Assembly (NCBI GenBank): GCA_000708835.1
Contig: DF237161.1
Coordinates: forward strand, 79,391-143,390
Direction: 5' to 3'
DNA length: 64,000 nucleotides
DNA from: Klebsormidium nitens
Lineage: Eukaryota > Plantae > Klebsormidiophyceae
Part shown: positions 32,645 through 54,175 of the stretch, piece by piece
Numbering within the stretch: position 1 is the stretch's first letter
Layout: every line of letters begins with the position of its first letter
Notes under the pieces: generated by a model
The model's input: the letters and a program-made list of their open reading frames with translations, nothing else
What the model was told of the DNA's origin: nothing
Database searches by the model: none
Position numbers and translations under genes: made by a program

Positions 32645-35600
32645 TCAATCTTGATGCTCCGACTTGATCCCGGTTGGGTCGGGCAGCCACTTCTGGCAGT
32701 TCTTCGCCCCGCACCTGCACTCTATGTGGCCGTCCGTACTCCCGGGGCTCGCTTGCACGGGATCTCCGTACTTGTAATCATAGGCGAGCTCCGTCCCAGC
32801 CACGATGTCCTTGATAGCGTATAGGGCCAGAAGGGGCTTCCCAGGGTGGAGGGTGTCCGTGTAGACGCTGTATATAGCCAGGTTGGGGTCGCAACTGCAC
32901 GCAAGAGGGGCAAAGCCAAAGCTTTGCTCAGGAATCTACTTCGTCTTTCATCGTTGAATACTGAAAGCCGTTACGTAAACCAGCGCACCCGCTGGCGTTC
33001 GCAGGGTGGGTCAGCGGGCTGTAGCATCAAGCGAAAGCGTTCACTCTGGCCCACGGAGATCAGCTGTTTCTGATCATGGATCTTAGACCGTGAGGGCCTG
33101 ATCTGGAAAAGAACCGATGTGACTGGCTTTTGAGTCGGTGCATCAGACATAACCCGGTACTTCCGTTGTCAACTCTAGAAGCCTCGCAGCTTGACAACGC
33201 AAAAAAAGAGCGAGGACTCTTGTTGCCTGTCCCTACCAAAGACCCGGCCGCTCGACGCCACGAAAGCCTTTTCGTGACATAAAGCCCCACAGACGCCGGT
33301 GTCAAAGCACGACATCTGCGTCTCAGACATGGCGCCTAGCAGAATGGAGCCCAAACGTCTCCTCGAGTCTGGGCGCGGTTTCCGGATGCAAGCGAGCAGG
33401 AGTGTCGCCAAACTGCACACAGAGACGGGCTGCGCGCGCGCACCTGTGGTTGATGTAGCGGATGATGCTGGAGGCGGGCCCCCCGTCCACGACGTACACC
33501 TCGTCCTGCTGCTCCGCGCTGCGCACGTGGTGGTCCATGTTGAACAGGTACCTGCACGGGCGACACGGCAGCTCAGTTGTAGAGCTAGAGAGTCGCCTCA
33601 GAAAGCGCCTTTTTGAGCAGCCTTTCACTCCGAAGTATAGCTGTTGCTCATTCGTTACAGACGCTTTCCACTTTGGGGAGCAGCTGACTAGTCATCTGAG
33701 CTTCGGCGTCTTACACCTTCACTGCAAGCCGCAATAACTCTGTCCAGCTTGGATCAATAGTAAGTAGACGGAGGGCTGTCTGACCGGAGCGCTGCGGAGG
33801 CACGTTGGAAGTAAGAGGCTGCGTCGACCTCGATGTGTCAGAATGAAGTTTGACTCACACGCTGTTCCGCTTGTTCGCCTCTTCGCTTGTGATCACCTCC
33901 CCCACGTACTGTCCGATCAGCCGACCCCTGCAAGAGAATTGTGGCCCTCAGAAAATGTCGGAAAGCCGAGAGAATTGGCCACCATTCAGCCTGGTGTGTC
34001 GGCTGTGCGCAGTTTTATGGAGCACACGCCTGCAGATGCAAGGGATGTACGATGCGATATCGCGGATTGTCGACGCACTGGATCAATGCGAAGCGAATAA
34101 TGAGCCTGGACTGGGCATCGATATCTTTCAAGCTTGGCCAACGGAGCGATTACTGCGCTTCCGGTTTGCGGGCCCTCTTTTGAATAGCGTGCAATAATGC
34201 AAAACCATCTAAGAGCAACGCAATCCAAGTGGTCAGCAGCCCTCCGGTCTCATTCCGCTCACCGCTGGATATCTTCCCGCGTCCGGACGCCGAAGCCGCG
34301 TCCGTTGTCCGTCTTGAACAGCTCCAGGTGGACGGACGCGCCCCGCTGGAGGGTGGAGTTGGGGCAGCCGGGCCAGCACGGGCACCGCGGGTTGCACTCG
34401 ATGATGGTGGGGTGCAGCTCCGGCGGGAGCTGCGCAGACAACAAAAGAAGGCCTTTCAGCACAAGTCGTCGTTGTTTCTTCCCCGCACCGACCATTCGCT
34501 GCATTGAATCTTATGTGGGGTGCAGCTCGAGAGGAAGGGTCAGGCAGAAAGAGAGCCTTCCTTGACCAAAAACCCCGTCCGTCCTTCACCTCCGCTTCAG
34601 AGTTTTCAAGGTCGCCGTTTCACACGGGGACTTCTTTGTAGCACCAATCAGTATTCAGCACGCGCTCGCTGACGATTGGACTGGAGAAAGCTTTGAGGTG
34701 ATTGCCAATTCCTCACAGTCGAAATAAGTTAGACCGCTGGCATCCTCCCTCCATCAAGGAAAGAATTTGATGCGCTCAATGCTTTCTCACGGCCGACATG
34801 TTGTGAAGATGGAGTGAAGGAAAGACAGAATTGGATGAATGACGTCGAAACTGCGCACCGAATTTAACTAGGTAGCCGAGACAGGCCCTCGAAGAAAGCA
34901 CTCCCAAGGGTTGAAAAGTGTGGTCCGATGCAAGAAGAAGATATCAAAAGACCGAACAATAGCAGGACCGGGAAAGAACACAGGAAGCAAGGCCGCGATG
35001 CCGGCACGCCCTCACCAGCAGCAGCCGGTTCTCGTCGTAGAACAGCCGGCCGCGCATCCGCTCGCGTTGCCAATCAAACCTCTGGTCGTCCTCCGCGGTG
35101 CGCAGCGCGTACCCCTCAAACGCCTCCAGGTCCCGGACGTGCTGGTTCAGCGGCGAGTCCGGATGGTCCGCACCGTCCGGGCAGCAGCCGGAGCAGCCGT
35201 CGGCCGGAGCGAAGCGCTCGTGGAAGTCGGCCAGGTCTGGGTGCAGCCTGGCCAAATTCGACAATAAATTGAGTTGGTGCGGGGTGATCGATCCGGGCAC
35301 TGACTCCTTGGGAGTGTGTCCAAAAGCTGTTTTAGATCGGGGTTCAGAATCACATTTATCTGTTCCGCTCTTCGTTCCCTTCTGAGTCGTTTTCGTAGCT
35401 TCAAAGCTGTGCCGTGCGCCTAGACAGACCAGGCGAAAAGCGAGAGCTTCTGACGGGGAGTCCACCAGTGGTCAAATGAAAGGTACTCTACTCCCTCTCA
35501 GGAACCCGAACGCGCAAAAGATAGTCCGAGCACTTGACGATGTGACGTCACTTGATCCTCCAGAAGCTCGAGTGGCCATCACAGGAACGGAATGCTGGTG

Positions 35601-38600
35601 GTCGCCTTAAAACCGGGAACTTACCGAAAGCCCGTGATGTAGTCCATCTCGAGCGGGCTGACGTCATCGTCCACGTCATTTGTGAACGGAATCGGCACCT
35701 TTTCCTTCCCCCCCGAGATGTCTGCGTGGACAAGACGAGCGCCCACTCGGGAGTAGGCAGCCCAGGGCCGAGTCCCGCTCTTTTTGGGAGGGGCTTTGGT
35801 TCCAGGACTGCTGACGAGGGGCCTGCAACAGAGGATGACGAGCATGAGTCTCTGAAGATGCGGAGAGGCATGCAAGGTTTGGAAGCAGCCCCATCAGCTT
35901 GGAGTTCTTTCTCTTTCGAAGCCGCTTCCGAGAAAAATCTAGGACACCGGTTTGATAGAGCAGAACGATACTTGAACAAGTGAAATCATAGTAGAAGTGT
36001 CACGCATCAGCAGCCATTTTCGTGCCTCATGAAGGTTTACGAACGCCAGTTCTTGCCAAACTGACTCACACTCGCGTCTCGGATCACCAGGTCTACTCTT
36101 GCACTCACATGGTCGGCACTTGCCTTGAAGTCGAAGTCGGCTTTTCGAACAGCTTATATCTTTCAAGAATTCCGAGTCAACAATGGAAACCTTTTGAATC
36201 GAAGCGAGGCAATATAATCCTTCTTATTAAGAAAGTGCCGCAGCATACCCATCCTCAGCAGGACGCCCATTTGCACCGCACCTACTACCCTTCCCAAAGA
36301 CTCAGTCAGGCCTGAAAGTTCAAACTGAACGCGATCACTCACCTTGTGGCAGGGCTTTGCGCATCCTTCTTCCCCGTGTACCGCTCCACGCAGCTGTCGC
36401 ACTGGCAGAACCCCCAAGGCTCAGAAACCTCCACCGGCCCCATGTGCGCATCGCCCTCCCGTGACCTCTTCCCAAGAGCACCCTTCTCTTCCATAAGAAC
36501 TCCGTTCGGCTGCGACACTGAGACGACGTCAGCTTCGCTGGCTTTGTTAACCTTGGAGCTCTCAGCCCCCGGCTCCAGCTCGTCTTCCGACACGCCCCCT
36601 CGATCCGTTTTTGCCTCCTCTAGTTGTTCTGAGTCACAGGCGAAGCACAGCCACGGAGCACCCCCCCGGATCGCTGCGAGCATCCGACCCCCCAGGAGGC
36701 GCTCCACGCACCGGTCGCACGCAGCGCAGGAGCAGCTCTCGCAGCGGCGGCGCTCGGAGGTGGGCGACTCGATGCCACACACCTGGCACAGCCGATCCCA
36801 GCCCCGGACGTCCTGCCAGGAGAAGCGCAATGCATTCAATGACGGTTGCATCAAGCGACGGGGGTATTAGGCTGATGCCCGCATCTCTCAAGCAAGTTTG
36901 CCAGGCTGCAGACATTCGGAAACGTGATATTCTCATGCATGTGGTGTTGGAGCAAGATGGGACTGAAGCCGACTCTTTGAATGGGTTTCAGCTTTTGTCG
37001 GGCCCAGCAGAGACACCAAAACAATTGAAAGAACATGGAGGGGTGGGCAAAACTTTCCCTCGAAGCTTTGCTGCTGAACTCCAAGCCCTTGGGTGCGATT
37101 TAAAGTGCTCTGGAGGGACGAGAACTTCAAGATTTGCAGTGGGTTTTGAATTAGCCGAACATACTTCACCAGCCGACTCATAGCCCACTGCCTGCCCGTC
37201 CAGTAAAGAAGAGAGTAGACGAGCAGACTCAGTCTCAAGAGCGCCGCTGACTCCTCGAATCCATGCTGCTTTCCAAGGAGAGGAGCGGAACCCCGTACAC
37301 ATTCACTGCCCAGAAAAGCAGCTTGCAACGTGGCACGCACCTTCCCACCATAATCTGCGGAGTCAATCGTCCGCGAGCAATCCTGGCACACCGCTACCGG
37401 CAGGCTTGGGTGCTGCCGCTGCTGGCTGCACTTTTGAGAGGCCCCGCACGCCGCACATGCAAACACCCGCTGCTCGCCTCTTCCAGACTCCGGATCACTC
37501 CCCGTCGGCTCTACAAGGCCCGGCCTGGGCCCCACCTGCACTTCCTTCGTCAATGCTGCGACCCCCTTCGCTTTGTCCTCTCTTTCACACCATTCTGCAG
37601 TACTCCCCGTTCGCTTCCTACCTTCCACTGGCGCAGCACTCCTTGGTGCCCCCGCGTTTTCCCCGAGCCGCTGATCAGCCTGTCCCCTCCCGGCCCCACT
37701 CTCTTTTGCGCTGGCGCAAGGCCTGAAGTGCTTCGAGAGGTGGCCATTCCGCGCCCGTGGCGTTGAAAACACCTTGCCGCAACCCGCCCAGCTGCAGGCG
37801 TGCACCTCAGGGCCCTTCCCATCTCGACTTGCTGAGGCCTTCACGCCTGAAGCACCAGGTTCTACCTTTGTCCGACGCTCTCCTAGGAGAGGGGACGTGG
37901 CCCTCTCTTCCAGCTGCTCTGTCCGATCGGTCTGCATTGCGACCGCTAGAGCAGCGTTCGTTTGACCCTCGCCCGCGCTCGAAGTACCTTCCTCTGCCGC
38001 CCCCAAGAAGTTCTGCCCTTCCCCTCGCCAATCAGCCCCGCTTGCCGTGCCTACGCCACCTTGACCGACGCCCACCGCTCCTGCTCTTGACATTTGCAGC
38101 CCGGCCGTATTTTCCCGCCCCTCCTGTCTGACCCTCGCTTGTTCGAACCTCCGCATGTCGCTCTTCGATCCCTCCAGCTGGGCTAAGTCGCACGAGAAGC
38201 AGAGCCAGGCGTCCAGGTCCGCAATTGCGCGCTGCTGTTCTGGCCCCAGCACCCGAGCAAGGCAGCGCTGGCACACCGTCTTGCAGCAGCCGTCGCAACG
38301 TGGCCGCACCTTCTCGCGCCGCCCGCACAGCTGGCAGTGCCGCTCGACGCCAGCCTTGCACTGCACCGCGAAAAAGAAAGGCCGCTTTGGTCGTTGGCAA
38401 AATTGATGATGAGAAGAAAGTTCTCGTCAATTTGAAGTGTGCCCTGTGGCCAATGGTTGCACCAATTCGGAAAGAAGCTTTTTAGGAAAGAGCGAGTAGA
38501 GTTCGAAAGAGAGGGCCTTTCCGTCGATGTCACGGACGTTCTGAGTCAGAGCAGCAAAGGAAAGGCTTGCTTTCCCCCCATCCTTCAAGTTCCTCGGCTT

Positions 38601-41600
38601 CTAGGATATCGATAGAATGAAGCGTTATCAGATCAACCCGCCCGAACGTTAAGTCTTCCGTATTCAGCGCCTAAGTAAGAGGAACTGGCAGAGAAATGCA
38701 CAACTTAGAGGTATGAAACAGCTCTAACCAATATAAACGAGCAATCGGAACTGTTCCACAGCTCAAATTCTTCTTGAGTTTGCCCTACACAAGCTCGCAC
38801 CGATAGCAACACGTATCGCCTTAACAAAGGACGTCGGCCTCAAACAATAAAAGAGCGGCCAATGATACTTGTTTTGCAGAGAAAGTAGTGCTTGTGTACA
38901 CCCGTGCGGCTCACCCTGTCTGAGAAGTTTGCGGAGTTGAACGACTGCACGCACTCCTCGCACAACACCGCCGGCAGCGCAGGATGCCGCTTCATTTCAG
39001 AGAGTCCCCCCGCACCCCCGCATGCAGCACACGCAAACTCCGACGCCTCCTCATCTGCCTCCTGGCGCCCGTTTTCCGTCCATTCCCGGGCCTGGCCGCA
39101 CGGGTCAGCTGCAGTGACGTCGTATGCGCTACCAGTCCCGTCCACCTCTATCCCTCGAGCTTTCGGCCCCTCCTCCGACCTCTTGGCTGCCTCCAAGTCC
39201 CCAACAGCCCCCGAGATTTCAGCGAGCTGCTTTTCTCCCACTTCCGTCACCTCGTCAGTTTGGACGTCAGAGCTGACGTCATCATACGTCGGCCCAAGCG
39301 GGTCCACCAGCTCGGTCCCTTCGTCCGACTCCTCGCCGGGCTCGACCGTGGGTTCTCTATAACCAGGCTCTAACTCACCCGCCAGGGCCTCGGCTAACAA
39401 CACTGCAGCGGGCGACTCCACGTTTCCAGGCGCTTCCTGTCTTGTAGTTCCCCCAGCTTTTGACACTCCCCCAAGGAGGCGAGCAACCTCGGCAGCCCCT
39501 ACTACTCGGCCCAATTGCCCCAAACCTCCAGGCGACCCTCGGTTGGAGAACCCTACCGTTGGCCCCAAAAGTTGCCCCGCCCCTTCCACTTCCCGCTCAA
39601 GGCGCCCGTTTCGTTCCCCGTTCACAACCCTTCTCTTTCCCTCCGACCCGTCGACCACCCTCTCCACCAGCCTCCTCATCACTCGGTGCACTTGCGGCGC
39701 CAGCTCGCTCACCAAAGCCAACAGCGCTGCGTCCAGCGAGACATCCTCAACAATGGCCGCCCGTTTGCTCTTACCAACGTCCTGTCGTTTCAACAGCATG
39801 TCCCTCTGCTTCTCCAACTGCGCCTCAATCGAAGGCAACTTCTTCTGCTTCGGGACGTCAGCCAAGATCGACATAAGCTCCCGGTTGCCCCTTTTCCTCC
39901 CCCGGTTACTCCCGCCGCCTAGGCTCTGCTTCTCAGGTTTGATCCTTGACACCTCTCTGCAAGAAGGGGAGAGCTCAGAGGCCGGCCTGCGGGGCTCCGA
40001 ACTGTCCCTGCTCCGCTTTTGAGGAGACTCGCCGAATCCCCTCTCCGACCCCTCCCACTCTCCACTTTCCGTACCCCGCTCTTCAGCCTCCGAAACGTGC
40101 TTTCGTCCTTCCGTCTGATGAACAGCTGCCTGACCCCCTAAGTGGCGCACCGTACTCTTGCGGGCTTGCAGCGTCACTGGGGGCTTCACCACCGTGCGTT
40201 TCGTCCCTCCCGCTTTCTTCGAGCGTTTACTGGTGTCCGGTTGCGGCCGCTTCGGGCCGCTTCGGGACGCCGCCCAGGGAAGCTGCCTCGGGGGAGCAAT
40301 TTCGCCCCTTCTGACTTGGCAATTGACATGGAAGTGGTCGGGGCATGCGACCGAGAGGCCGCTGTTCTCCAGACCGTCGTGCATGCGGCAGCCAGCCGCG
40401 AGCGCGCATGTGTAGTGGTACACGGAGTGACATGACGACTCGACGCGGCAGCGAGAGGTGGCGCCGACTTGGTTGCAGTACGTGCAGCGCTGTAACGTGA
40501 AAGCAAGTACTCGTCTTGTTGGGAACCACCTTGATAGGAACAGTAAGATTCTGCCTGGTTCTGAAGAAAATCAACACACATCAACACGGCAGTGTAACTT
40601 ACGATTAAGGGTGCTAAAAAGACCGCAAACGCAATTGATGAACGACGGCTTTGCAAAGAAACCGGCTTGGACACCAGGTTGAACGACACGGAATCTGACG
40701 GACCATTTCAATTAGGAACCGGCTCTGGAGGGAAGCAAGTCGGACGGAGCTACCTCATGCCGAATCAACTTGGACGCTGACTTGTCAGCAACGAGGGAAC
40801 TAGCAACGAGGGAACTAGCCTGGAGGGAGCTATGCTGGACAAACTTGTCTGGACGGAAGGAGCTCCAGCATATCCTTATATTGAAGCGGGACCAGACTGG
40901 GACGAAAATCGTCTTGAAGTCCTAAGCCAATTCGTACTAAAGCTGTCGGGAAACCATGTGGGTCAACACCATGTGGGTCAAACCGGCCCGCTTATAGTGT
41001 GTCTTGCTTTACCTCAAAAGTTTCTTGGCTGTCTGGCCGCAAATAGGGAAAGAAAGTTTCGCAAAGGACCCAGATTGGGGACTCGATCATACCGGACGAA
41101 GTAACTTCGACTTTGTGCATCTTGTTCACGCAAACGGAAAGCAACTATTTGTAGGTCGTTCTAGCAGGTTATACCAGCATTGGGGAAATTGAGGCGAAGT
41201 GCTGACGAACCGATGGTGAGTACGCTTGGACTACGCTCTTGCCACCGCCGCTCAAGACTTGGTGACAACTCAAATTTCTGACCGAACTCGCCAGTATCAC
41301 ACAATAATGCTGAACTTCCGTTCTTAGGATGAACCATTTCCGGTGCAACATCAACGGGTTCTTTTCTCTCAATGCGCTTCTTAATAGTTCTCACCACGGG
41401 CGAGCGCTTCTTTCCGCCGCTGTTCGGTGAGCCCGTCGAGTGGATGACCGCTTTGGTGAGCCCCACGAACGCCTCGCCGTCCCCGGGCTGGTACACGGAG
41501 GGCGTCCAAAATGCGCACAGCTGATGCACCACGGCCTTGGCGCCTGAGTACTTGGTGGCGAACATCCGCGACCTGGGACCAAGAAACGCAAGTGTGTCAG

Positions 41601-44600
41601 TATCAACTTAGGCCAAATCCGTCACGAGGCGTCTGCTGAATGGTGCACGCCGCAAAGTGGACATGACATGTGGATCCGCTGTGGGTCACCTCAAAGGAGT
41701 CCGGCAGTGAAGCCGAAGCACAAAGGAAGGAGAACACTGATAGAATCTTGGACCCTGAGGAGCAGGCCTCCGCTTGCATAGCGTTGTGGCTTTCGTAGGC
41801 AAGGATCAGTGGATTAACTTCACAAGTTTTTGACTGATTGAGCAGGCAATTATGAGTGGAGAGTTGGAGTCCGTTGGACAACGGTTGGCCACAGAAAGCG
41901 ACGGCACTCAAGTTTGGCCGTAATGGTGACATTGCCTGCTTGCTGATCGTGATGGAACCCCAAAGAACAACATGGAAGGGGATGTTCGTCTCGTAACAAA
42001 GAGTTGATGTATGAGTTGGGGTAGTGAGCTTTCATGTCTGTCTAGTCTGCATGCTTCAAAGGTCAAATTGCCTCGCTAACTCGCTTCACAACCCAAGCAG
42101 CTTGCGCAACGGCGATATGCAGACTAAATACTGAGTGTCAGCTGTTGTACCCAAGCAGAAAAGAGGCGGATATGCTGTCAGTACCAAACAATGGAAGAAC
42201 GCACATTTTCGACCACAATGGAAAGAAGAACAACATGACCGAAACTCCCCTCCTCGAAGTCCTCAAGTTTTGCTGGAATAAGATACATAAGCGAAATCGT
42301 TCGTTCTCATGAAACGAAACAACAAAACTGCCGGGGAAGATATGTGAGCGAGCTAGCGTGCCTCGGGGCAAAACGATGCAGACAGGGCCAGCTTGGTGCC
42401 CCTGACAACTCTGCACCAGCTGTCAGGGACTGCCCGTGAGACGGAACCAAGCGGAACGGACTAGATCGAGGCAACAAGAGGCCCGGCATAGAAAAGCCAT
42501 GAGCGCCCCAGGACAAAATTAAGCAGCCGGTGACAAGCAGAAACAAGCTGCGTTCCAGGAGCAGATAGCGGGGCGTCTGCTCGCCGTACTAAGACCCTTT
42601 AACGACACATCACATGGCAAGACGGTATCCGCAGCGGGTTTCATAGCTGAGTCCGACTAAATCTTCGGGAAACGGCTGAAACTGCAGCCCACAAGACGGC
42701 ATCAGCAGAAAAGGGACCGGACAAGACGAAGCAACGGAAACTCAAAGCAAAATTGTACATGCTAGCAGCCTTTCTAGACTCACTGACGGCCATTGTAAGG
42801 TCTGCTTCGAGAAACACAGACGGCTTTTTGCAGCGAAGCGACGCTGGAGAGAAGAGCCGTCTGCAATAAGGTAGTTTTAGCGTAGGGGTACCATGCCAAG
42901 GCGATATTAGTACTGGTTCGACCTTCGAAAAAGCAAACACACTGCGGAACTGATAGCACTGGTATGTCTTTGGATGTCAGAACAACCTTGCGCAAGCAAT
43001 GGTACCGATACGACTTTCCGCGTCGCTTTCGCCACTTGGTGCGAGCCTGCTTGAACGTTTGTCTTGAGTTGACTTACACTTACGGACCGCTTCGGAGTCG
43101 AAGTCAAGGGCGAATAGCGCTTCACTATACGGCCAGTCAGATAAACCTTCTCTAGCTTCGAGAAGCTATCTCCAACCGACAGTATGCAGTGGAAGATCTC
43201 TTTTGCCGGTCTCATTACAGCAAAGTGATGGACGACGGAAGAAGTGGCGATAAGAAAACCGATGCAGCATAGCGGAAAGCGGACAAGCAGCGGAACAGCG
43301 ATGACGGACGGACGTAGGCGCGGGCTTATGAAACAGGAGAACCACCGTAAGAACTCATGTTCGGACGGACGGAACGGCAGAGCGGAAAGACAGAGAAGAT
43401 GGCAGCTCCCTGACGACACCACGACGAGAGGCTGAGTCCCTAAGACAGCTCGACCATCCTTAAAGCAGCGCGCGGAAGGCTGGGAAAAAACATAGTCACA
43501 AACGGTAGGACGGACGGACGGATGGACGAGGACGGGTTGAGGGAACTCTGGGCGGACGGGACAAGCAGAAAGGTGAGCGGACAGAAGGAAGGCACGACGG
43601 ATGGACAGATCCGAGTGGCGCTGCTTCACAAGGCTCATTATATAGCAGCCAGGGACACAAAAGGGGGCTCAGAAGAGAATGGAGGATTGGCACGCGGCAC
43701 ATGGCACCACAAGCTCCTTCAACAGTCCTTGCCACAAACTGACGTGATCGTAACTTAGCGGCATCGGTAAGCTTGCAGAAAACGAGACCGCAAGCACAAG
43801 CAGAGAGACTCGGTACTGGCGACAAGCAAACTATCGCAAGGTGACTGACAGAGACGGTACCCAACGACTACGTTGCACGAGTTTTCCAACGGCTTTTGGA
43901 CAGGCAGCTCGGACGGATGTGTATAAGTGCACAGAGACTAATTGGGCGCGGTATTAATTGCGCCATGCTCGTTGAAAACATTGCCATACGATCTACGTCA
44001 ACAACTTCCTGCCGTTACGATACTCTGCTTAAGTGGACCTGTTTCACAGAGCGTCATGGCCCACTGGAAAAGGCACTAAGAAGTGAAACGCCGTTTGCAG
44101 CCCAGAGACCCAAGCACAGACGTATCCTCCCTGCTGCCAAATGCAAGGGCCCTGTGGAGACCACCGAGGACAAAATCCACAGCACAACAGCAACGCCGAC
44201 GCACAGAAGCCGATTGTCGGGCCAGCCTCGTTGCCGTCGTCCTTGAATGGAAAAGATCCAGGAGAAGGGACGAAGATGCGCTATTTCCGCCCCTTTTGAT
44301 ATCAACACGCAACAACTCTCGAACCGGATTCAATGAAAACGGAAAAGGCTGGGCACAGAGGGAGCTTACTTGACGTGAGCTCTTAGCGGCCTGGTGCACG
44401 CGCACGCCTCGTCCCGTCTACCGCAGGTGGCGCAGTACCACTCGCCGCGCGTCCGCGAGGGACCCGCCCCGCACAGCGCGCAGCTTCGCCCGTCCCCCTT
44501 CGCCCCTTCCGCTCCCGGTAACTCCGGAATGACGACACCCTCAACCCACACGTCCGCCTTGGGGGATGGCTCCGCCACGTGGCCACTTGCCACTGGTTGC

Positions 44601-47600
44601 TCAATGATGCCAGTGGCCTGAACGACCGGCGCCGAGACGTCGTGGGTGACTGGGAGCGGTTTCAGTTGGTGAGCGTGGACGATGGCCCTATCGAGCCCGG
44701 TCCCGCTAACAATCTTCTGCCCTTTCCGGGCCGTCGATTCTAACAGCATGCCCGTTGCGCTCTCTCCCTGCTTGCATTCTGAGGCGGGACCTCTCTCAGC
44801 CTTAACCTCATTCGCTGCCTTTTGAACCCGCAGAGCCTTAAGCATCTTCAGTGGGACATCTTCGTCATCCTGGTGCCCCCGACTTTCTTCCAGCCCACTC
44901 CCCGCACCACCTTTGCCCAAGGCTTCCCCTTGCGACCTAGGCTTCAAAGCTTCGTCCTGTTTTATCTCCACAAGTTGCTTATGTACACATACAGTCTTTT
45001 CTACAAGATCCGCTGGGACTCGGAACCTGCTCGCACTTGCCTCTTCCTCTTCCCGCCTACTTGCCTCGACCTCCCCAGCCTTGCCTTGGCTGCCCCCCCA
45101 AACCGGAAGGCTTGACTCCCGGCCTACCCTGTGATACTCAGCTGACAACGTGCCAGCTTGCACGTCCCCCTTCGGCCACCTGTCACCGCTAGCGTCTCCA
45201 GCTACCCGTGCCACCTTCTTCGGTTGAGCGAAGGCCTGGTTCTGGTCGATCTCTAGCCACTCCACGCCCCGCTTCACCCCCCCACAGCTCTGTAAGCCGA
45301 TACTCTTTTGGCCACATTCCTCTACGGCCCTGCCAAGACCCTCCTTGTTGGCGCTCCCCTGACAACACACCACCGCAAGTCATAAGCCTGCTTGATCGAA
45401 CTTCGAGACCGCTTGAGTGTTCTTCTCAATATTGAAGAATCAAGCAAAGATACAAAGAAGGACATCAGAAAATTAATGAGTCCTGACAGGCTTCAGTTTT
45501 TCTGGTCCTTACACAATGTCTTGTTCCCAAACTTGGAACTAGAGGCGATCCGAAAAGTCTGGAAGGCCTACAAAACCGCCTACAAAACCCAGGATGATCT
45601 CTCTCAAGAAGGGCCAATCCAGCTTGATCGAGCCCTAACCTAAAGCAAGTGCCCTGTTTCCCGCAGGGCTTCCAAGTCACTGTTGCTTGTGACGTTGTTG
45701 ACTGCCGGCCCAACGGTGAACACAAGTCGCACAAAGTGGAATTCCAACTCACCAGCGCTTTCTTTTGGTCGCTCTCAAACCCATCCGCATCCACCCCCGC
45801 TCTTGGCTCGCCCTTTTCGATTCTCCACGAAGCCGGAGGCTCATGTTGGTCCAGGCTCGCCCGTTCTGCAACCACGCCCCCCAAGTCCGAGCCACTTCTC
45901 TCCCCATCTCTCGTGCCAGCCTTGCCGGACTCTACGCCGCCCCACCCAAGCTGGAAGTTAGCCGCCCAATCGGCCCGCTTGAGATCCTTCGCAGGCATCT
46001 CCTCGAAACAGAGCCAGTATAGGGGGTGCGCTTGTAAAGCGTACAGCTGCTTTGCCACCGAGGGGGGCGCAAAGTCCGCGGGGCTTGTCTGCGTTTCTTT
46101 ATCTGCTATCTCCCAGGGCTGTTTCGGGCTGCTCAGGGGGGGCTGCTTGAGGCTGAGAAAGCTGGAAAGGGGTACGTTTTGTGTTGCTGGTCGAAAGAGC
46201 GCCTCAAACCTTTCAGCATTTCCGGGGGGCCTTGGCTCATCAGGGAATGCACTTCTCTCGGTAGCAGCCATGATTGGCTCGTCCTCCTGCTTCGGCGACC
46301 CTGCCTTCGTAACTACATGAGAACAGGGCGAGGTTTGGGCCAAGGAAGGAGGGCACCCAGTGTGCTCCTCGGTAGGCTCTGCCCCAAGCTTTTCCAGAAG
46401 GTTCAACTCTTGCCTTGGGGAACCAGTTTCCATTATTTGACCGAACAGCGTCAGCACTGGCGGCTTTCGTTGCTCTTGCAAGTCGGACAGCGACCCCAAG
46501 TGGACAACCCCTGACCCGGACTCGCTAGCCACCGCTCCAAACCTTTGTTGCTCTCCGCCGCTTTCCTGTCTCTCCCTACTTGAAAACGAACCACCATCCG
46601 GTGGCGTCCTCTCATTGTCGTGACCCGGCTCCTGTATGACCGAAGTTTTCTTCAGTCGTTCGCGCTCAATAGCCTCCACTAGCGTCAGGCCCTTCTTCCT
46701 GAGCTCCCCAGCAGGCCCAACCTTCTCATCAATCTGTAGACTCAACCGGTCAACTTTTTTCTCGTCGCTTTCTCTCCGAGCCTCTCGCCTCGTACCCGAT
46801 CTGCCTTCCCCTCTGATGACCTCGTCCTTTCCATACTTAGCCTGACCCTTACTCTTGCCTCGGCTTCCAACATCGCCTCGCCCCCGCTGCTCACTTGCCT
46901 CTGGCACATCTCTTAAAGTTTGTACGCTCTCCGCCCCGCTGCGCATCCCCTCCCTCTCCTCTGTTTCTGTGAGGCTTCTCGAGTTCCGATCCCTGCCCTT
47001 CCAGCTTCCTCTCTCCCACGCCTTATCCTTTCGGGGTGACTTACTCCGCGGTGTCGAGGACGAAACCTCAACCCGCCTCTCTTGCCCCCTTCTCCCGCTC
47101 GCTTCGTCTCGTTCCTTGTCCCGCCTTCTCTCTCTTGGCGATTCGCTTCTCCGCCGCTTCAAGGCCCGCACCTTCCGACCATCTCCCAACTCCCCCGATG
47201 CCCGGTCGGCGCTCTCTTTCCTTTGGCCCCCCTCTTGCACTCCCGTTCTCCCCTCTGCTCCGCTAGCCGACTCTCGCAGCTGCCTTTCGCTGCCGTACCC
47301 TGGAGAACGAGGATTCTTTTCCGCACTCCGTTGCCGCCCAGCAACCACCAAGTGACCCCCTCGACGCCCACTTCCCCAGTCTCTTGGACTCCTCTCCATG
47401 CTCCGACCCCTGCCGTCGACCCAGGCATGCCTGGAGTCGCGCTCCCACATTTGACCGTCGCCTCTGCCTCCCTCAAAAGGGAACGGACCACGCTCTCGTG
47501 AAAGAGACCCCCTAACATTCGGCAGCCCCCGATCCGGCAGCCCCCAATCAGAGGACTCTCGCTCCCATGGGGGTGGTTCAACTCTTGGGTACGAGAGCGC

Positions 47601-47771
47601 AAGGTGGTCAAAGCCAAATAGTCCATTTGGTAAGCGCACAATAGGGCCAAGACCCTCGCTTGAAAAAGGGGGTGGCGCCAAGGTAGGGGGGCCATGAGGG
47701 AGAGGGGCTACCCTATCATACACGGAGCCCCCTACAACTCCGGGTGGCAGGTTTCCAATCGCTCTATCCAT
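32645..47771 (-). CDS. SUV39/SUVR-like histone-lysine (predicted H3K9) methyltransferase with extended PHD, two ADD domains and a C2H2 finger, ~2424 aa
   Basis: 12 phase-consistent exons (5'->3'): 47771-45753, 45358-44370, 41572-41395, 40489-38915, 38360-37341, 36812-36343, 35822-35625, 35247-35016, 34429-34263, 33927-33859, 33551-33444, 32894-32645 (sum 7275 nt). Motifs: DISGGKE, pre-SET IIECNPRCPC..C.N, GRGFGV, YVGEVIT, YLFNMD, INHSCDPNL, ELAYDY and post-SET CRCGAKNC. ePHD: VHQLCAFW…CTYC..GA…C…YHYTCA…CPDH. Confidence 0.88.
36633..37463 (-). other. ADD zinc-finger domain 2, split by a phase-0 intron at the equivalent position
   Basis: CAACG…HPSLPVAVCQDC…|…CQVC…CESCSCAACDRCVERLLG…WLCFAC. Confidence 0.8.
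38187..39037 (-). other. ADD (ATRX-DNMT3-DNMT3L) zinc-finger domain 1, split by a phase-0 intron
   Basis: CAACG…HPALPAVLCEEC…|…CQLC…CDGCCKTVCQRCLARVLG…WLCFSC follows the ATRX ADD cysteine spacing. Confidence 0.8.
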
Positions 47772-49783: not shown

Positions 49784-52700
49784 ATGGCACCCCGTAAGGA
49801 CCGCGTGTCCTACTTCTTTGATGCTGACGTCGGCAGCGTCTACTATGGTCCCAACCACCCCATGAAACCGCACCGCCTGTGCATGGCACACAGTCTAATT
49901 CTGGGATATGGACTGCACGAGAAGCTGGAGGTATACCGGCCCCACAAGGCGTACCCGCAGGAGTTCGCGCAATTCCATTCCACAGATTATGTGGAATTTC
50001 TGCACCGGATCACGCCCGAGATGACGGACTACTACAAGGACCAGCTGGTGCGATGTGAGTTTATCTGACTGTTCGACCAGGACATGCTGACTTGGCAACT
50101 TTGCTTTGGTCGTTTTCTGCGGAGCGTTCGTTATGATGTTGCGGTGCTGTGGGTTTTATCTTAAGGCTTTTTCTCTGCCAATTTCTGGCGGAGATTTTTG
50201 AATCCTGAAATACCATCTGCTCTCATTGGTGTTACTCTGCTGGATATATAGGTGGTCATCAGGCTTCTTGGCTGGGGGGGTGGTAAGAGTGCTCCGCTTG
50301 ACTAATTCAGCACCGGGGCCGTTCTTGTCTCTTAAGTGGAAAAGAAGCATTCTCAGAGGAGGACAGCGGAGATGAAAAGTTGCTGGCGTTGATCATGAAA
50401 GGAGTCAACGGCAGGAGTGAACACTTGGCAAAGTATCAGCATAGGCGGCAGTTCATCATGTTTTGACTTTGCCTGGTGAATAGAAACGGATCAGGTGATC
50501 TCTGTAGGTGTGAAGGAGGACTTGAGGGGTGCAGCGCTTCGATCTTGTGGGGAAACTGGCTTCAATTGCTGGGTATATTCATCTTTGAGTACTCGAAATT
50601 CAAAGCAGGTCGTTCTGCGAAGCTTTACAGCGGGGGTCTCCTGATTCTTGCTTGCTATGGTGCCTGCAGACAACATGGGCGAGGACTGTCCCGTGTTTGA
50701 CGGCCTCATCGACTTCTGCAAGATTTACACGGGGGGCACCATTGACGGCGCGGTGCGGTTGAACCATGGCCTGTGCGACATTGCGATCAACTGGTCCGGC
50801 GGGTTGCATCATGCCAAGAAGCAGGAGGCCAGCGGGTTTTGTTACATCAACGATCTTGTGCTGGGCATCCTGGAGCTGCTCAAGTACCACGCCCGCGTTT
50901 TGTACATAGACATTGACATTCATCATGGGGACGGGGTTGAGGAGGCGTTCTACATGACAGATAGGTGAGAGGTTGGGTAAGGGGTTACTGTGGCATGAGG
51001 AATCTCGTGCTGAAGCATCTGTGATTGACTACCTTTCTCAGTAGAAGACTGAGAAACTGGCTTGAGTGTTCGAGAAGACTTCATTACAGGATAGGTCGTA
51101 AGTAACCAAGAAGGCAGATCTGCGATTGTTCAACAGGCACTGCGGTTTTCTGTTGAAGACCTCTCTGAAGACCGTTCTGTGAACAGGTTTGCTCCGTGCG
51201 ATGCCCCTGGTTTTGGATCACTGCCAATCGCTTCTTGCAAAGACGACTCAATGTCACCAACTACGAAGGGTCAAGTTACCCCAACTCCACAGACAAGCCT
51301 TGGAACTCATCCTTGATCAATCAACATCGCAGGGTAATGACCGTGAGCTTCCACAAGTACGGCGACTACTTCTTCCCTGGGACGGGGGACGTCAAAGATA
51401 TTGGCGAGAGGGATGGCAAGTTCTACGCCGTCAACGTGCCGTTCAAGGACGGCATTGACGATGCTGGCTTCCATAAGCTATTCAAACCGGTAAGTCTCTT
51501 AGCCATGTTCTGTCAGAACCGGAGGAGGGAGAACGTGGACTTCCGTTGCCGTTTCCGGGACTTTGCCTTGGTTATCACCCCTGCATGATGCTGCAATCAA
51601 CGGTGGGCAGGCGTCGAGCATGCAACTTCCGGCCGTCGAAAGAGGTATGATAGCTAAGGCGGGGTCAGATTCGACGACGGAGTTCATCCATCTTCAGGGT
51701 TCTGTCAGCCTAACACGGCTCTCTGTCATTAAGGCCCATCGTCTGTAGCCGAAAGGAAAGAGACGGCTAGAAAGGCACCTTCCGGATCTCGTGGACGTCG
51801 CACTCAACCTCGTTCATCAACGCATCCGCTTTTCAAGAGCTTCAAAAGATGCGACTGGTCAAAAGGCAGTCTAGCTGGTTTAGCAGTAGCATAAGGATTA
51901 CGTGGGCCTTCTGCAGCCTTGTTCCTATCATTTCAATGACTTGCTGGTGTTTTCCCCTAGGTAATGACCAAGGTGATGGAGATTTTCCAGCCGGGCGCAG
52001 TCGTTTTGCAGTGCGGGGCAGACTCGCTCGCGGGGGACCGCCTCGGTTGCTTCAACCTCTCCATCGACGGTCACGCAGGTGTGGCATCGCGCACCCTCCG
52101 CTTTCTACTTGCTTCGTGTCTAAGTTTCAAGTCGACTCTGCCGTTTGTATTTGTTCTTTCTTTGCGTGTCTTCGCTGGTAACCAGGTGCTTCCCACCACA
52201 CCGGGGTCGAGTTGCGATAGGACGAGTTCCAGACGTCGTCAAGCAACTGTCTCGCTTGTTCCCGCTTCTATCAGGTTCTGTTCAGTCGCATCCCTGTACT
52301 GCCCTTTCATGGGCTTTTCAAAGGCCTCCTGAGTCCTGTAAGACGCTTACCACCATGCTTGCAGCGACGGCTCATGTGCAATGTGCATTGGGCCTCCGAA
52401 AAATGGCTTCTCATTGACGGTTGATTTGAACACGTTGCTGCCGCTATTTCGACAGAAGTTTGTCCACCCCAGCCGCTGACTGCTCCTTTGGCGTGCAGAG
52501 TGCGTCAAGTTTATGAAGAAGTTCGCCGTCCCGCTGCTGGTGACGGGCGGCGGCGGGTACACGAAGCAGAACGTGGCGCGCGCCTGGACGTACGAGACGG
52601 CGGTCCTGCTGGACGCGCAGCTCCCCAACGAGCTGCCCGTCACCGAGTACTACGAGTACTTCCGCCCCGACTACCTGCTCAAGCCGCCCGTCAACACGCT

Positions 52701-54175
52701 CATCGTGAGGCCCGCGGACTTTGTCGCACTTCTGCCTCTATTCCCCCGCTGTCTTCCTTCTTTTTCAGCTATACTTCGTCCCCTTTCTACTCCGAATGAT
52801 CTGTTGGCCCATCTTTTCTTCGTCGGGTGTTCATCTTTAGTGAACTTCTGTAGCATCTTCTGCTTGTCTTCCTGACTGATCGCACTGATGTCTTTGTCGT
52901 ACCTTCCCTTCGACACGGTCCCTTATCGTCGGCCCACTATGGAATGCCTTTCTCTCGAAAAGGAGATGACGGCCATTCTAGTCAGAAAAGTCTGATGATT
53001 GTTCCCTTCATAGGGGTAGCGGTAGATATTCAAGGCGTCCTCGAAGTGTCGAAATCTCCAGGATGGATAACAGCTTGGAGCAAACATCCTCGAAATTTTT
53101 TTCACCCTGACACATTGCATAGCCTTCTTAACGCATCCGATGCTCGAACCCCTTGCAGAACCTTCTCAAATTCTTCCAGAACCTCGGCTACGCGCTCGAA
53201 AATCAGACCTCGGCATTGCGACGTCTGTCTTCGCTAGCCTTCTAACCCTCTTGGGGTTCGCCCATCCCCAATCCCCTTTGCCTTCTCGAATTGGACTTAT
53301 TAGACCGTTCTCGTTCGCTCGCTGCGTGCAGGACAACGGCAACGCCAAGTCGTACCTGCAGGCCATCAAGAACACCATCATGGAGAACCTGCGCGCAATT
53401 GTGCACGCGCCCAGCGTGCAGATGCACGAGGTGCCGCCCGACTCGTACATTCCCGAGGTCGACCAGGACGACCTTACCAGCCCCGACGAGCGCTTCTCGC
53501 GTACGCAACTTCGCAACTCGAGTTTCCTTTTTCTTTGGCATCCTGTGATCTGTCGCCTCTTTCTGTGTTAAAAAAGTGAATGGGTGTACACCAGTTTCAG
53601 ATGAGGACTTTTGACGGGGACTGCAATGGCGGATGTTCTTACCAACGATCGTACAAGGAACGTTTGCACAAGTCAGCTTCCACATCCTTGGAAGCCAAAG
53701 CTGTGCCTTGAAACGGGCAGAAAGGGATGCTGCTGTTGAGTTTGTTACGTACACTGCAGCAGCTTTATGGAGGCTGTGGCTTTGCTACATCTACTTTCAG
53801 CTAAATGCCTGTACGTGTTTACGTGTTTCCCGCTTTGCGAAAACCAGGCTGTTGCACCCCCTCTCGTGCTCAATCGCTACAGAAGCCGCATCCAGCTCAT
53901 GCACGGCCAGCCCGTGAACTATGGACTCTGGCGGCAGACTCAAGGCTCACTTTTAGGACAACGATATTCCTAGCTTTACGTAGGCTCGAATTTGTTCGGT
54001 CGAGACACAGAGATCTTGTTCAACATTCAGTTGCAATCCTTGTTGGACACTCACCATTTTTGTCCTGTTCTCTGCAGAGTTTCAGAAGGACAAGATGGTA
54101 GCTAGAGACGATGAGTACTACGAGGATGAGTACGATCAGGACCATGATACAGAGGAGCCCAGAAGACATGCTTGA
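49784..54175 (+). CDS. HDA9: Class I (RPD3-type) histone deacetylase, HDA9/HDAC3 orthologue, ~437 aa
   Basis: Exons 49784-50054, 50670-50964, 51333-51489, 51961-52078, 52499-52704, 53332-53500, 54078-54175 (sum 1314 nt). Motifs [60 protein letters not shown] and RDDEYY closely match plant HDA9. Confidence 0.93.

What the first reader, a model, noticed from the sequence alone, without database searches (positions are those of the whole stretch)
32645..47771. SUV39-type SET methyltransferase carrying tandem ADD readers, an extended PHD and a C2H2 finger
Seen: one spliced ORF joins ePHD, ADD1, C2H2 (CSWAGC…HLSKH, ~37728-37803), ADD2, pre-SET, SET and post-SET. Established: ADD domains occur in ATRX and DNMT3/3L and read unmethylated H3K4 (ATRX also H3K9me3). 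Land-plant H3K9 methylases use SRA (SUVH), WIYLD or C2H2 (SUVR) modules instead. Inference: this is a histone-only read/write heterochromatin writer with an architecture I do not recognise from described families. Both ADD domains are interrupted by a phase-0 intron at the equivalent position, suggesting internal duplication.
Basis: partly seen in the sequence, partly recalled or inferred. Interest (0 to 1): 0.8.

Follow-up and report, generated by a model that had tools for sequence, protein, structure and literature searches.

The report
Algal H3K9-type methyltransferase with two ADD modules
One expressed gene of the alga Klebsormidium nitens encodes a SUV39-type histone methyltransferase that has two ATRX-like ADD zinc-finger modules inserted between an extended PHD finger and its catalytic domain, a domain combination I found in no described family, although what the ADD modules bind is still unknown.

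Summary
Window 47771-32645 (minus strand) is a 12-exon gene, all introns GT-AG, identical to the public model GAQ84920.1 (2424 aa, "Putative histone H3 (Lys9) methyltransferase", Klebsormidium nitens).

Spliced contigs from four studies join exons 5-12, so ADD1-PHD, C2H2, ADD2 and SET lie on one mRNA.

Both Cys modules are true ADD domains, not ordinary PHDs:
- The only significant solved-structure hits are ATRX ADD (E 5e-9 and 4e-11), then DNMT3A/B/L ADD.
- Predicted folds match ATRX ADD (TM 0.78-0.85).
- They are 41% identical to each other, and a phase-0 intron splits each at the same aligned column.

The SET domain is SUV39-class with intact motifs and a Tyr at the Phe/Tyr switch. It is sister to a land-plant ePHD-SET clade (Marchantia MpSUVR3/4), which has no ADD. 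The ADD-ADD unit is therefore an insertion of about 970 residues. It is conserved, under purifying selection, in two further unannotated Klebsormidium-like lineages.

Caveats:
- The C2H2 finger is missing in the most distant lineage.
- The residues ATRX uses to read H3K9me3 and H3K4me0 are mostly not conserved, so the "histone read/write" idea is only a hypothesis.

Verdict: a new variant of a known kind, of moderate interest.

The parts
32645..47771 (-). Whole coding region of the gene (12 exons, 2424 codons plus stop) = GAQ84920.1 / A0A1Y1I1X1 of Klebsormidium nitens
   Evidence: P0001 maps at 100% in 12 blocks, all 11 introns GT-AG; identity of the record
45753..47771 (-). Exon 1, residues 1-673: Arg/Glu/Ser-rich region with no recognised domain and low conservation
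   Evidence: No Pfam hit; 58% identity and dN/dS 0.46 against L001
40316..44422 (-). Extended PHD finger (ePHD, about residues 986-1120), spread over the end of exon 2, exon 3 (41572-41395) and the start of exon 4, interrupted by introns 2 (44369-41573) and 3 (41394-40490)
   Evidence: Pfam zf-HC5HC2H 38.1 bits over residues 1019-1114; PHF6, Jade-1 and BRD1 ePHD are the only PDB hits of that exon; dN/dS 0.10-0.25
38142..39037 (-). ADD1 (about residues 1547-1660): GATA-like C4 finger at the end of exon 4, then PHD finger plus helix at the start of exon 5, split by phase-0 intron 4 (38914-38361) after R1587
   Evidence: ATRX ADD E 5e-9, followed only by DNMT3A/3L/3B ADD; model pLDDT 83 with TM 0.83-0.85 and rmsd 1.7 A to ATRX ADD; all 12 zinc ligands kept in three lineages
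37728..37796 (-). Single C2H2 finger (residues 1776-1798) in the linker between ADD1 and ADD2
   Evidence: Pattern match in K. nitens and L001, none in L003; weak KLF/Sp1 similarity; Pfam 13 bits, below the cut-off of 25.2
36594..37463 (-). ADD2 (about residues 1887-2000): GATA-like finger at the end of exon 5, then PHD finger plus helix at the start of exon 6, split by phase-0 intron 5 (37340-36813) after K1927
   Evidence: ATRX ADD E 4e-11 over 116 residues; model pLDDT 86, TM 0.78-0.80; 41% identical to ADD1; junction seen in RNA contigs
34358..35713 (-). Pre-SET region (residues 2121-2251) across exons 7-9
   Evidence: Pfam Pre-SET 35.2 bits; aligned to MpSUVR3; junctions seen in RNA contigs
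32771..34297 (-). SET domain (residues 2272-2383) across exons 9-12. [quoted passage not shown]
   Evidence: Pfam SET 72.6 bits; SUV39H2, DIM-5, SETMAR and Clr4 are the top PDB hits; motifs invariant in three lineages
32684..32719 (-). Post-SET motif CRCGAKNCQKWL (residues 2401-2412)
   Evidence: Aligned to the post-SET of SUV39H2, DIM-5 and Clr4; conserved in L001 and L003

Best explanation
This is one transcribed gene for a 2424-residue lysine methyltransferase of the SUV39 (Su(var)3-9) family. Its core (extended PHD finger, pre-SET, SET, post-SET) is the algal counterpart of the ePHD-SET proteins of non-flowering land plants (Marchantia MpSUVR3/4 type). In the Klebsormidium lineage, about 970 residues were inserted between the ePHD and the pre-SET. 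The insert carries two ATRX-type ADD modules that arose by tandem duplication of a two-exon unit. In K. nitens and its closest sampled relative, but not in the third lineage, there is also one C2H2 finger.

Shown: the gene structure; the single mRNA for ADD1-PHD through SET; the ADD fold and family of both modules; purifying selection on them; intact catalytic motifs; and Tyr at the Phe/Tyr switch.

Inferred: the SET domain methylates H3K9, probably to the mono- or di-methyl state. The ePHD and the two ADD modules act as chromatin-docking modules, most likely on basic histone-tail-like peptides, that recruit or regulate the catalytic domain. That would give a built-in coupling between reading and writing chromatin. 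The ligand is probably not read as in ATRX, because ATRX's key contact residues are replaced.
For: Gene and mRNA:
- 12 exons with GT-AG introns match the public model exactly.
- Contigs of 7950, 7823, 7520 and 4580 nt from four studies remove introns 5-11 exactly and read on into exon 4. The position of exon 5 in the 7950-nt contig (5212) equals 451 nt of leader plus the 4761 nt of exons 1-4.

ADD identity:
- Only ADD families are hit among solved structures.
- Folds have TM 0.78-0.85 to ATRX ADD.
- All zinc ligands, plus R246- and G249-equivalents and H189, are kept.

Duplication: ADD1 and ADD2 are 41% identical (87 bits, against 40-46 bits to ATRX), and their introns share the same column and phase.

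Constraint: whole collinear loci exist in L001 and L003, with dN/dS 0.08-0.25 in domains against 0.3-0.8 in linkers. ADD1's GATA-like half against L003 is an exception at 0.63.

Catalytic class:
- Pfam Pre-SET and SET score above their cut-offs.
- SUV39H2, DIM-5 and Clr4 are the best hits.
- The tree places it sister to the ePHD-SET clade with support 81/98.
- MpSUVR3 has its ePHD directly before its pre-SET and no ADD.

Phe/Tyr switch: Y2380 aligns with DIM-5 F281. F281Y makes DIM-5 a mono/di-methylase (PMC3356298).
Against: - No biochemical data exist for this protein or for any ePHD-SET relative I could find. Substrate and product state are inferred from family membership.
- Pfam does not call either ADD above threshold (14.5 bits against 27).
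- ATRX's H3-reading residues are poorly conserved: Y203 is Ser (ADD1) or Thr (ADD2), E218 is Arg in both, E252 is Gln or Met, and the acidic loop keeps 1 of 6 and 3 of 6 residues (PMC12900699, PMC7764450).
- The N-terminal half of the pre-SET has fewer Cys than the canonical nine-Cys cluster (sequence).
- Tree support for the sister relationship is moderate (UFBoot 81). The tree also lacks Arabidopsis SUVR1-4, SETDB1 and SETMAR.
Confidence: 0.72

Rival explanations
1. The ADD modules do not read histone H3 marks. They serve as docking sites for other partners (for example H3-like basic motifs in other chromatin proteins, or histone variants), or as structural spacers, so the protein is not a self-contained read/write device.
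For: The single aromatic residue that contacts K9me3 in ATRX (Y203) is Ser/Thr, E218 is reversed to Arg in both modules, E252 is lost, and most of the acidic loop is lost in ADD1 (PMC12900699). The same paper shows that even ATRX's ADD binds non-H3 partners (macroH2A, CHD4) through this surface.
Against: Every ADD domain studied so far binds the H3 tail. The PHD half, all zinc ligands and H189 are conserved. An aromatic or hydrophobic residue is conserved at positions 204 and 209 in all three lineages. The modules sit inside a histone methyltransferase beside an ePHD.
Confidence: 0.3
2. The catalytic domain does not write H3K9 methylation. It targets another lysine or a non-histone protein, or it is a weak or inactive enzyme that acts as a scaffold (as proposed for some plant SUVH/SUVR proteins).
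For: No member of the ePHD-SET clade has been assayed, as far as my searches show. The N-terminal half of the pre-SET has fewer cysteines than the canonical cluster. SETMAR, a close PDB hit, is not a classical H3K9 enzyme.
Against: All catalytic motifs (GxG, YLF, NHSC, ELxYDY, post-SET CxCx4C) are intact and invariant in three lineages, with dN/dS 0.08-0.18. The best matches are bona fide H3K9 enzymes: SUV39H2, DIM-5, Clr4.
Confidence: 0.15
3. The locus is two genes (an ePHD/ADD zinc-finger gene and a SET gene) wrongly fused by annotation.
For: None after testing. The only weak point is that junctions of introns 1-4 were not examined with reads.
Against: Single contigs in four independent studies run from exon 5 (ADD1 PHD, C2H2, ADD2 GATA) through ADD2 PHD to the stop codon and 3' UTR. 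They also continue upstream into exon 4 for a length that matches exons 1-4. The frame is open across every junction, and the order is conserved in L001 and L003.
Confidence: 0.02

Closest known systems
ePHD-SET proteins of non-flowering land plants (Marchantia MpSUVR3 and MpSUVR4, with relatives in Riccia, Diphasiastrum, Adiantum, Ginkgo, Cryptomeria and Taxus)
   Same: An extended PHD finger lies N-terminal to a SUV39-type pre-SET/SET/post-SET at the C-terminus. Identity is 40% over 351 residues, E 5e-61. The SET domain is sister to this clade in the tree. Tyr sits at the Phe/Tyr switch (ELSYDY).
   Different: In MpSUVR3 the ePHD (1084-1174) runs straight into the pre-SET (from about 1183). 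None of the listed members carries an ADD Pfam domain. The Klebsormidium protein has about 970 extra residues there, with two ADD modules.
ATRX ADD domain
   Same: Same three-part fold (GATA-like finger, PHD finger, C-terminal helix) and all 12 zinc ligands. It is the best sequence and structure match for both modules. R246, G249 and H189 equivalents are kept.
   Different: The ADD is attached to a SET methyltransferase instead of a SNF2 remodeller, and is present twice. Y203, E218, E252 and much of the acidic loop that bind H3K9me3/K4me0 are replaced (PMC12900699).
DNMT3A/3B/3L ADD domain
   Same: Second-best family by sequence and fold. It is the precedent for an ADD placed next to a methyltransferase domain, which it targets and regulates through H3K4me0 (established knowledge of DNMT3A).
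   Different: The partner enzyme there methylates DNA, not protein. Similarity is weaker (E 1e-5 to 0.04; TM about 0.55-0.6). No PWWP domain is present here.
SUV39H1/2, Clr4, DIM-5
   Same: Closest solved catalytic domains, with the same motifs and post-SET. SUV39 and Clr4 are the classic case of a reader (chromodomain) fused to an H3K9 writer.
   Different: There is no chromodomain. The Phe/Tyr switch is Tyr here and Phe in SUV39H2 and DIM-5, which predicts a lower methylation state.
Plant SUVR5 (three C2H2 fingers plus SET) and SUVH (SRA plus SET)
   Same: These are SUV39-family enzymes of the same kingdom that use an added module for targeting. SUVR5 clusters were the nearest Atlas hits, below the 0.9 threshold (0.88).
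   Different: They form separate, well-supported clades in the tree. This protein has no SRA and no zf-C2H2_3rep domain. Its lone C2H2 finger is not conserved.

Membership tests
SUV39 / Su(var)3-9 family of SET lysine methyltransferases | SET domain flanked by pre-SET and post-SET regions | tested here: met
   Pfam SET 72.6 bits (cut-off 22.4) and Pre-SET 35.2 bits (cut-off 29.1). The post-SET CRCGAKNC aligns to SUV39H2, DIM-5 and Clr4.
SUV39 / Su(var)3-9 family of SET lysine methyltransferases | Catalytic and cofactor motifs: GxG, YxF, NHSC, ELxF/YDY | tested here: met
   GRGFGV, YLFNMD, NHSCDPN and ELAYDY are present and invariant in three lineages.
SUV39 / Su(var)3-9 family of SET lysine methyltransferases | Canonical nine-cysteine pre-SET zinc cluster | tested here: inconclusive
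   The C-terminal Cx3CxCx3C half is present. The N-terminal half shows only CxxCC. A conserved CxCxxC lies about 100 residues upstream.
SUV39 / Su(var)3-9 family of SET lysine methyltransferases | H3K9 methyltransferase activity | not testable with these tools
   Needs an enzyme assay.
ADD (ATRX-DNMT3-DNMT3L) domain | GATA-like C4 finger, then an atypical PHD finger, then a packing helix, with 12 zinc-binding Cys | tested here: met
   Both modules align end to end with ATRX ADD, with all 12 Cys. The models show the same order of elements.
ADD (ATRX-DNMT3-DNMT3L) domain | Closer to ADD families than to ordinary PHD fingers | tested here: met
   All significant PDB sequence hits are ATRX or DNMT3A/B/L. 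In Foldseek all listed hits with E <= 0.001 are ADD domains.
ADD (ATRX-DNMT3-DNMT3L) domain | Reaches Pfam's curated thresholds (ADD_ATRX, DNMT3_ADD) | tested here: not met
   Best score is 14.5 bits against a cut-off of 27 for PF21255. There is no PF17981 hit.
ADD (ATRX-DNMT3-DNMT3L) domain | ATRX-type residues for H3K9me3/H3K4me0 reading (Y203, acidic loop 207-218, H189, E252) | tested here: not met
   H189 is kept. Y203 is S/T, E218 is R, E252 is Q/M, and the acidic loop keeps 1 of 6 (ADD1) and 3 of 6 (ADD2) (PMC12900699).
ADD (ATRX-DNMT3-DNMT3L) domain | Binds the histone H3 N-terminal tail | not testable with these tools
   Needs peptide binding assays.
Extended PHD finger (zf-HC5HC2H) | Pfam model above threshold and similarity to solved ePHDs | tested here: met
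   38.1 bits against 29.1. PHF6, Jade-1 and BRD1 ePHD are the only PDB hits.
Land-plant ePHD-SET clade (MpSUVR3/MpSUVR4 type) | SET domain groups with the clade | tested here: met
   Sister position, support 81/98. Highest identity 45% (Riccia). Arabidopsis SUVR1-4, SETDB1 and SETMAR were not in the tree.
Land-plant ePHD-SET clade (MpSUVR3/MpSUVR4 type) | ePHD directly adjoining the pre-SET | tested here: not met
   About 970 residues with ADD1, C2H2 and ADD2 lie between them.
C2H2 zinc finger | C-x2-4-C-x12-H-x3-5-H pattern, Pfam threshold, conservation | tested here: inconclusive
   The pattern is present in K. nitens and L001. Pfam gives 13 bits against 25.2. The finger is absent in L003.
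SUVR5 / SUVH | zf-C2H2_3rep (SUVR5) or SRA (SUVH) domain, and clade membership | tested here: not met
   Neither domain is found in P0001. Both groups are separate clades with support 100/100.

The most novel reading that the evidence does not exclude
The two ADD modules are working histone-tail readers with a specificity different from both ATRX and DNMT3. They gate the SET domain directly, in the way DNMT3A's ADD gates its DNA methyltransferase. A single polypeptide would then turn 'no H3K4 methylation', or another tail state, into H3K9 methylation without passing through DNA methylation. With two ADDs, one ePHD and one catalytic site, it could span both H3 tails of a nucleosome or neighbouring nucleosomes and spread the mark by itself.
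Probability: 0.3. Interest if true: 0.7.

Novelty: new variant of a known kind. Interest (0 to 1): 0.5.

Why it matters
The well-studied ADD domains are those of ATRX and the DNMT3 family, where they tie the methylation state of the histone H3 tail to H3.3 deposition or to DNA methylation. Here nature has joined ADD modules, twice, to an H3K9-type histone methyltransferase in a streptophyte alga related to land plants.

If the modules read histone tails, this is a compact natural experiment in read/write coupling of repressive chromatin. It would also give a handle on how heterochromatin was targeted before the SRA-based SUVH/CMT loop of land plants became dominant.

The finding also draws attention to an almost unstudied ePHD-SET clade in liverworts, lycophytes, ferns and gymnosperms. 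The ADD modules have diverged pocket residues, so they could widen the known ligand range of the fold. The gene is expressed, and the domains are small enough to test directly.

Tried and rejected
- Pfam on single exon ORFs gave only sub-threshold hits because the domains are split by introns. This was resolved with the stored public protein.
- Both ESM Atlas feature searches returned only sub-threshold generic SET or zinc-finger clusters and were uninformative. One Atlas call failed on length.
- The paper search for 'ADDz' returned unrelated papers. 'MpSUVR3' is in no paper of the library. The two plant SET surveys mention neither ADD nor an ePHD in this group.
- In the first dN/dS run, the L001 ADD1-PHD row (25% identity) was an artefact of a read-through HSP overwriting the true exon. 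Redone, it gives 82% identity and dN/dS 0.22.
- I first took the Tyr of IRYINHSC for the Phe/Tyr switch. The alignment to DIM-5 showed the switch is the Tyr of ELAYDY (Y2380). The conclusion (Tyr) stands, but for the right residue.
- I first counted the ADD introns as one codon apart. Recounting residues showed they lie in the same alignment column.
- Considered and rejected: the two-gene reading; SUVR5 or SUVH membership; ADD modules as ordinary PHD fingers.
Exons were searched one by one by reference, and whole-domain queries used parts of the public protein P0001 that a search tool had returned.
Full report
**What is there.** The finding lies on the minus strand. Open segments there carry, in order, a long low-complexity N-terminus, Cys-rich pieces and SET-like pieces. 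I searched the candidate exons one at a time, by reference. I never joined exons into a spliced model of my own for any search. An exhaustive HMMER search of 1.84 billion representative proteins with the single exon 36936-38366 returned only ten proteins at E <= 0.001. The best was P0001, 2424 residues. P0001 is GAQ84920.1 / UniRef A0A1Y1I1X1, [quoted passage not shown]. That also confirms the organism that earlier notes of this scan had named.

P0001 maps back to the window at 100% identity in 12 exons. All 11 introns are GT-AG:
- E1 47771-45753
- E2 45358-44370
- E3 41572-41395
- E4 40489-38915
- E5 38360-37341
- E6 36812-36343
- E7 35822-35625
- E8 35247-35016
- E9 34429-34263
- E10 33927-33859
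- E11 33551-33444
- E12 32894-32645, including the stop codon

**One gene, one mRNA.** I laid contigs of four runs from four different studies on 32645-38600. Each run holds a single long contig (7950, 7823, 7520 and 4580 nt). Each contig skips introns 5 to 11 with CT..AC ends on the plus strand, which is GT..AG for the gene. The skips fall exactly at the model's coordinates. Each contig has a loose end at 38361, and its letters are the plus-strand sequence from 38916 onward, that is the 3' end of exon 4.

In the 7950-nt contig, exon 5 starts at position 5212. That equals 451 nt of leader plus the 4761 nt of exons 1-4, and 224 nt follow the stop codon. The contig therefore has the size of the full-length mRNA. 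The runs are labelled "RNA?" (a guess), but contigs that lack seven introns cannot be genomic DNA. Thin unspliced contigs (depth 2.5-5 against 30-79) cover parts of some introns and look like pre-mRNA. The two-gene reading is refuted for the ADD-to-SET part. Introns 1-4 rest on the model, on splice sites and on the contig length.

**The Cys modules are ADD domains.** Pfam does not call them (best 14.5 bits against a cut-off of 27). That may be why the public Pfam annotation lists only ePHD, Pre-SET and SET.

The sequence evidence against all solved structures is clear:
- ADD1 (P0001:1535-1665) matches ATRX ADD at E 5e-9 over about 100 residues.
- ADD2 (1875-2005) matches ATRX ADD at E 4e-11 over 116 residues.
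- Both matches cover the GATA-like finger, the PHD finger and the start of the helix.
- Every other significant hit is a DNMT3A, DNMT3B or DNMT3L ADD. No ordinary PHD protein appears (single exons gave the same answer).

The structural evidence agrees. AlphaFold2 models, made without templates, have mean pLDDT 86 (ADD2) and 83 (ADD1). Foldseek puts the ATRX ADD crystal structures first, with TM 0.78-0.80 for ADD2 and 0.83-0.85 (rmsd 1.7 A) for ADD1. All further listed hits with E <= 0.001 are DNMT3 ADDs. The small alignment used for folding contained other ADD proteins, so the fold result is supportive rather than fully independent. All 12 zinc ligands and the equivalents of ATRX H189, R246 and G249 are present.

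**Internal duplication.** ADD1 and ADD2 are 41% identical over 111 residues (87 bits, E 6e-28). Each is much closer to the other than to ATRX (40-46 bits). Intron 4 follows R1587 and intron 5 follows K1927. These residues occupy the same column of the ungapped stretch of that alignment, and both introns are phase 0.

**The other domains.**
- *ePHD.* It reaches Pfam's threshold (zf-HC5HC2H 38.1 bits, residues 1019-1114). It matches only the ePHDs of PHF6, Jade-1 and BRD1 among solved structures.
- *C2H2 finger.* It has the classical spacing and weakly resembles KLF/Sp1 fingers, but it is below Pfam's threshold.
- *Catalytic part.* Pre-SET (35.2 bits), SET (72.6 bits) and a post-SET CxCx4C are present. 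The best solved matches are SUV39H2, DIM-5, SETMAR and Clr4. In the 190-600 residue size class the hits are mainly animal SUV39H1/2.
- *Motifs.* GRGFGV, YLFNMD, NHSCDPN and ELAYDY are intact.
- *Phe/Tyr switch.* It is Y2380. DIM-5 chain index 265, which is residue F281 for a construct that starts at residue 17, is the Phe of ELTFDY and aligns with the Tyr of ELAYDY. F281Y converts DIM-5 from a tri- to a mono/di-methyltransferase, and the equivalent change makes G9a/GLP monomethylases (PMC3356298). A mono- or di-methylating enzyme is therefore the likeliest prediction. This is inference.

**Relatives and history.** The closest full-length relative is Marchantia MpSUVR3 (1522 residues; 40% identity over the pre-SET to post-SET region, E 5e-61, plus a separate match of the ePHDs). 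In MpSUVR3 the ePHD (1084-1174) is followed within about ten residues by the pre-SET. No ADD-like segment is detectable.

A search with MpSUVR3's ePHD-SET region found this architecture in Riccia, Diphasiastrum, Adiantum, Ginkgo, Cryptomeria and Taxus, and in a second Marchantia gene (MpSUVR4). None of these has an ADD Pfam domain.

I built a maximum-likelihood tree of 34 SET regions. It places the K. nitens sequence as sister to the nine ePHD-SET proteins (support 81/98). It lies apart from SUVR5, SUVH, EHMT and the SUV39/Clr4/DIM-5 group, each of which has strong support. The tree lacks Arabidopsis SUVR1-4, SETDB1 and SETMAR, which the capped searches did not return.

The simplest history is an ancestral streptophyte ePHD-SET gene into which the Klebsormidium lineage inserted an ADD unit that then duplicated.

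**Conservation.** Three unannotated genomic contigs carry the same gene:
- L001 (a Logan assembly) has all 12 exons in order. Its SET exons are 88-97% identical and its linkers about 55-64%.
- L003 (a 113-kb JGI metagenome contig) is a more distant lineage, with synonymous divergence near or beyond saturation. It again has the ePHD, both halves of both ADDs, pre-SET, SET and post-SET, all collinear.
- L002 is about 98% identical to L003 but ends before the SET exons.

dN/dS is 0.08-0.25 in the ePHD, the ADD halves and the SET region, against 0.3-0.8 in most linkers. ADD1's GATA-like half against L003 is an exception at 0.63. All zinc ligands are kept in all three lineages. The C2H2 finger is present in K. 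nitens and L001 but absent from L003 in all three frames. It is therefore not a core part of the architecture. I could not name the organisms behind L001 and L003.

**How it probably works.**
- *Shown:* a transcribed, selectively maintained protein that joins an ePHD, two ADD folds and an intact SUV39-type catalytic domain.
- *Inferred from family knowledge:* the SET domain methylates H3K9, probably to me1/me2. The ePHD and ADD modules dock the enzyme on chromatin or regulate it. Precedents are the chromodomain in SUV39/Clr4, the ankyrin repeats in G9a/GLP, the SRA domain in SUVH, and above all the ADD of DNMT3A, which both targets and gates its methyltransferase.

The specific idea that the ADDs read H3K4me0 or H3K9me3 as ATRX does is not supported at residue level. 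In ATRX, Y203 makes the cation-pi contact with K9me3. The acidic residues D207, D208, D212, D214, D217 and E218 are essential for H3 binding, and H189 and E252 also matter (PMC12900699, PMC7764450). By the HMMER alignments the Klebsormidium modules compare as follows:

| ATRX residue | ADD1 | ADD2 |
|---|---|---|
| H189 | kept | kept |
| Y203 | Ser | Thr |
| E218 | Arg | Arg |
| E252 | Gln | Met |
| Acidic loop (6 residues) | 1 kept | 3 kept |

A hydrophobic or aromatic residue is conserved at positions 204 and 209 in all three lineages. A pocket of a different make-up is therefore possible. I put roughly even odds on H3-tail binding of some kind, and clearly lower odds on ATRX-like specificity.

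**Novelty.** The gene itself is in public databases, with a generic name. I found no description of an ADD-SET combination:
- none in the plant SET-domain surveys (PMC5725981, PMC3063831);
- no paper naming MpSUVR3;
- nothing for ADD plus H3K9 methyltransferase in algae;
- no ADD+SET cluster in the Atlas;
- no such protein among the exhaustive search hits, apart from this gene and its orthologous fragments.

I could not run an InterPro/PROSITE architecture search, which might already flag the ADD domains in the UniProt entry. Earlier notes of this scan do not cover this gene.

My verdict is a new variant of a known kind: a lineage-restricted elaboration of the ePHD-SET branch of the SUV39 family. 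It is of moderate interest because it offers a directly testable natural fusion of a candidate tail reader to an H3K9-type writer.

Noticed in passing
window 51196-52875, plus strand: Exon fragments of a class I (RPD3-type) histone deacetylase (Pfam Hist_deacetyl, 52.5 and 31.4 bits). It lies head-to-head with the methyltransferase gene, with its first detected exon about 3.4 kb from that gene's ATG. Two repressive-chromatin enzymes may therefore share a divergent promoter region. I could not check whether the pairing is kept in relatives, because L001 and L003 end too early.
   Followed up: partly
window 36416-36343, minus strand (residues 2060-2084, end of exon 6): A conserved motif WGFCQCDSC(V/A)xRYTG lies between ADD2 and the pre-SET. 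It is kept in the distant lineage (P0004/L003), and this linker has dN/dS 0.15 there. It may supply the cysteines that the N-terminal half of the pre-SET zinc cluster seems to lack. This is unexplained.
   Followed up: no
window 32868-33418, 33942-34093 and 34489-34739: Thin contigs (depth 2.5-5, against 30-79 for the spliced contig) cover parts of introns 11, 9 and 8 in several runs. They are most simply unspliced pre-mRNA or low-level intron retention. One carries G>T at 33372.
   Followed up: no
window 42001-44000 (inside intron 2, 44369-41573): The 2.8-kb intron 2 has a strong A-over-T skew on the plus strand (0.25) that the rest of the window does not show. I did not examine its content for repeats or a mobile element.
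   Followed up: no
protein P0221 (Mustelus asterias, 1544 aa): A shark protein combines an ePHD (PF13771/PF13832) with MBD, Pre-SET and SET domains. This is another ePHD-plus-SUV39-family arrangement, outside plants. In the tree it sits on a long branch of its own.
   Followed up: no
I did not re-examine it.
   Followed up: no
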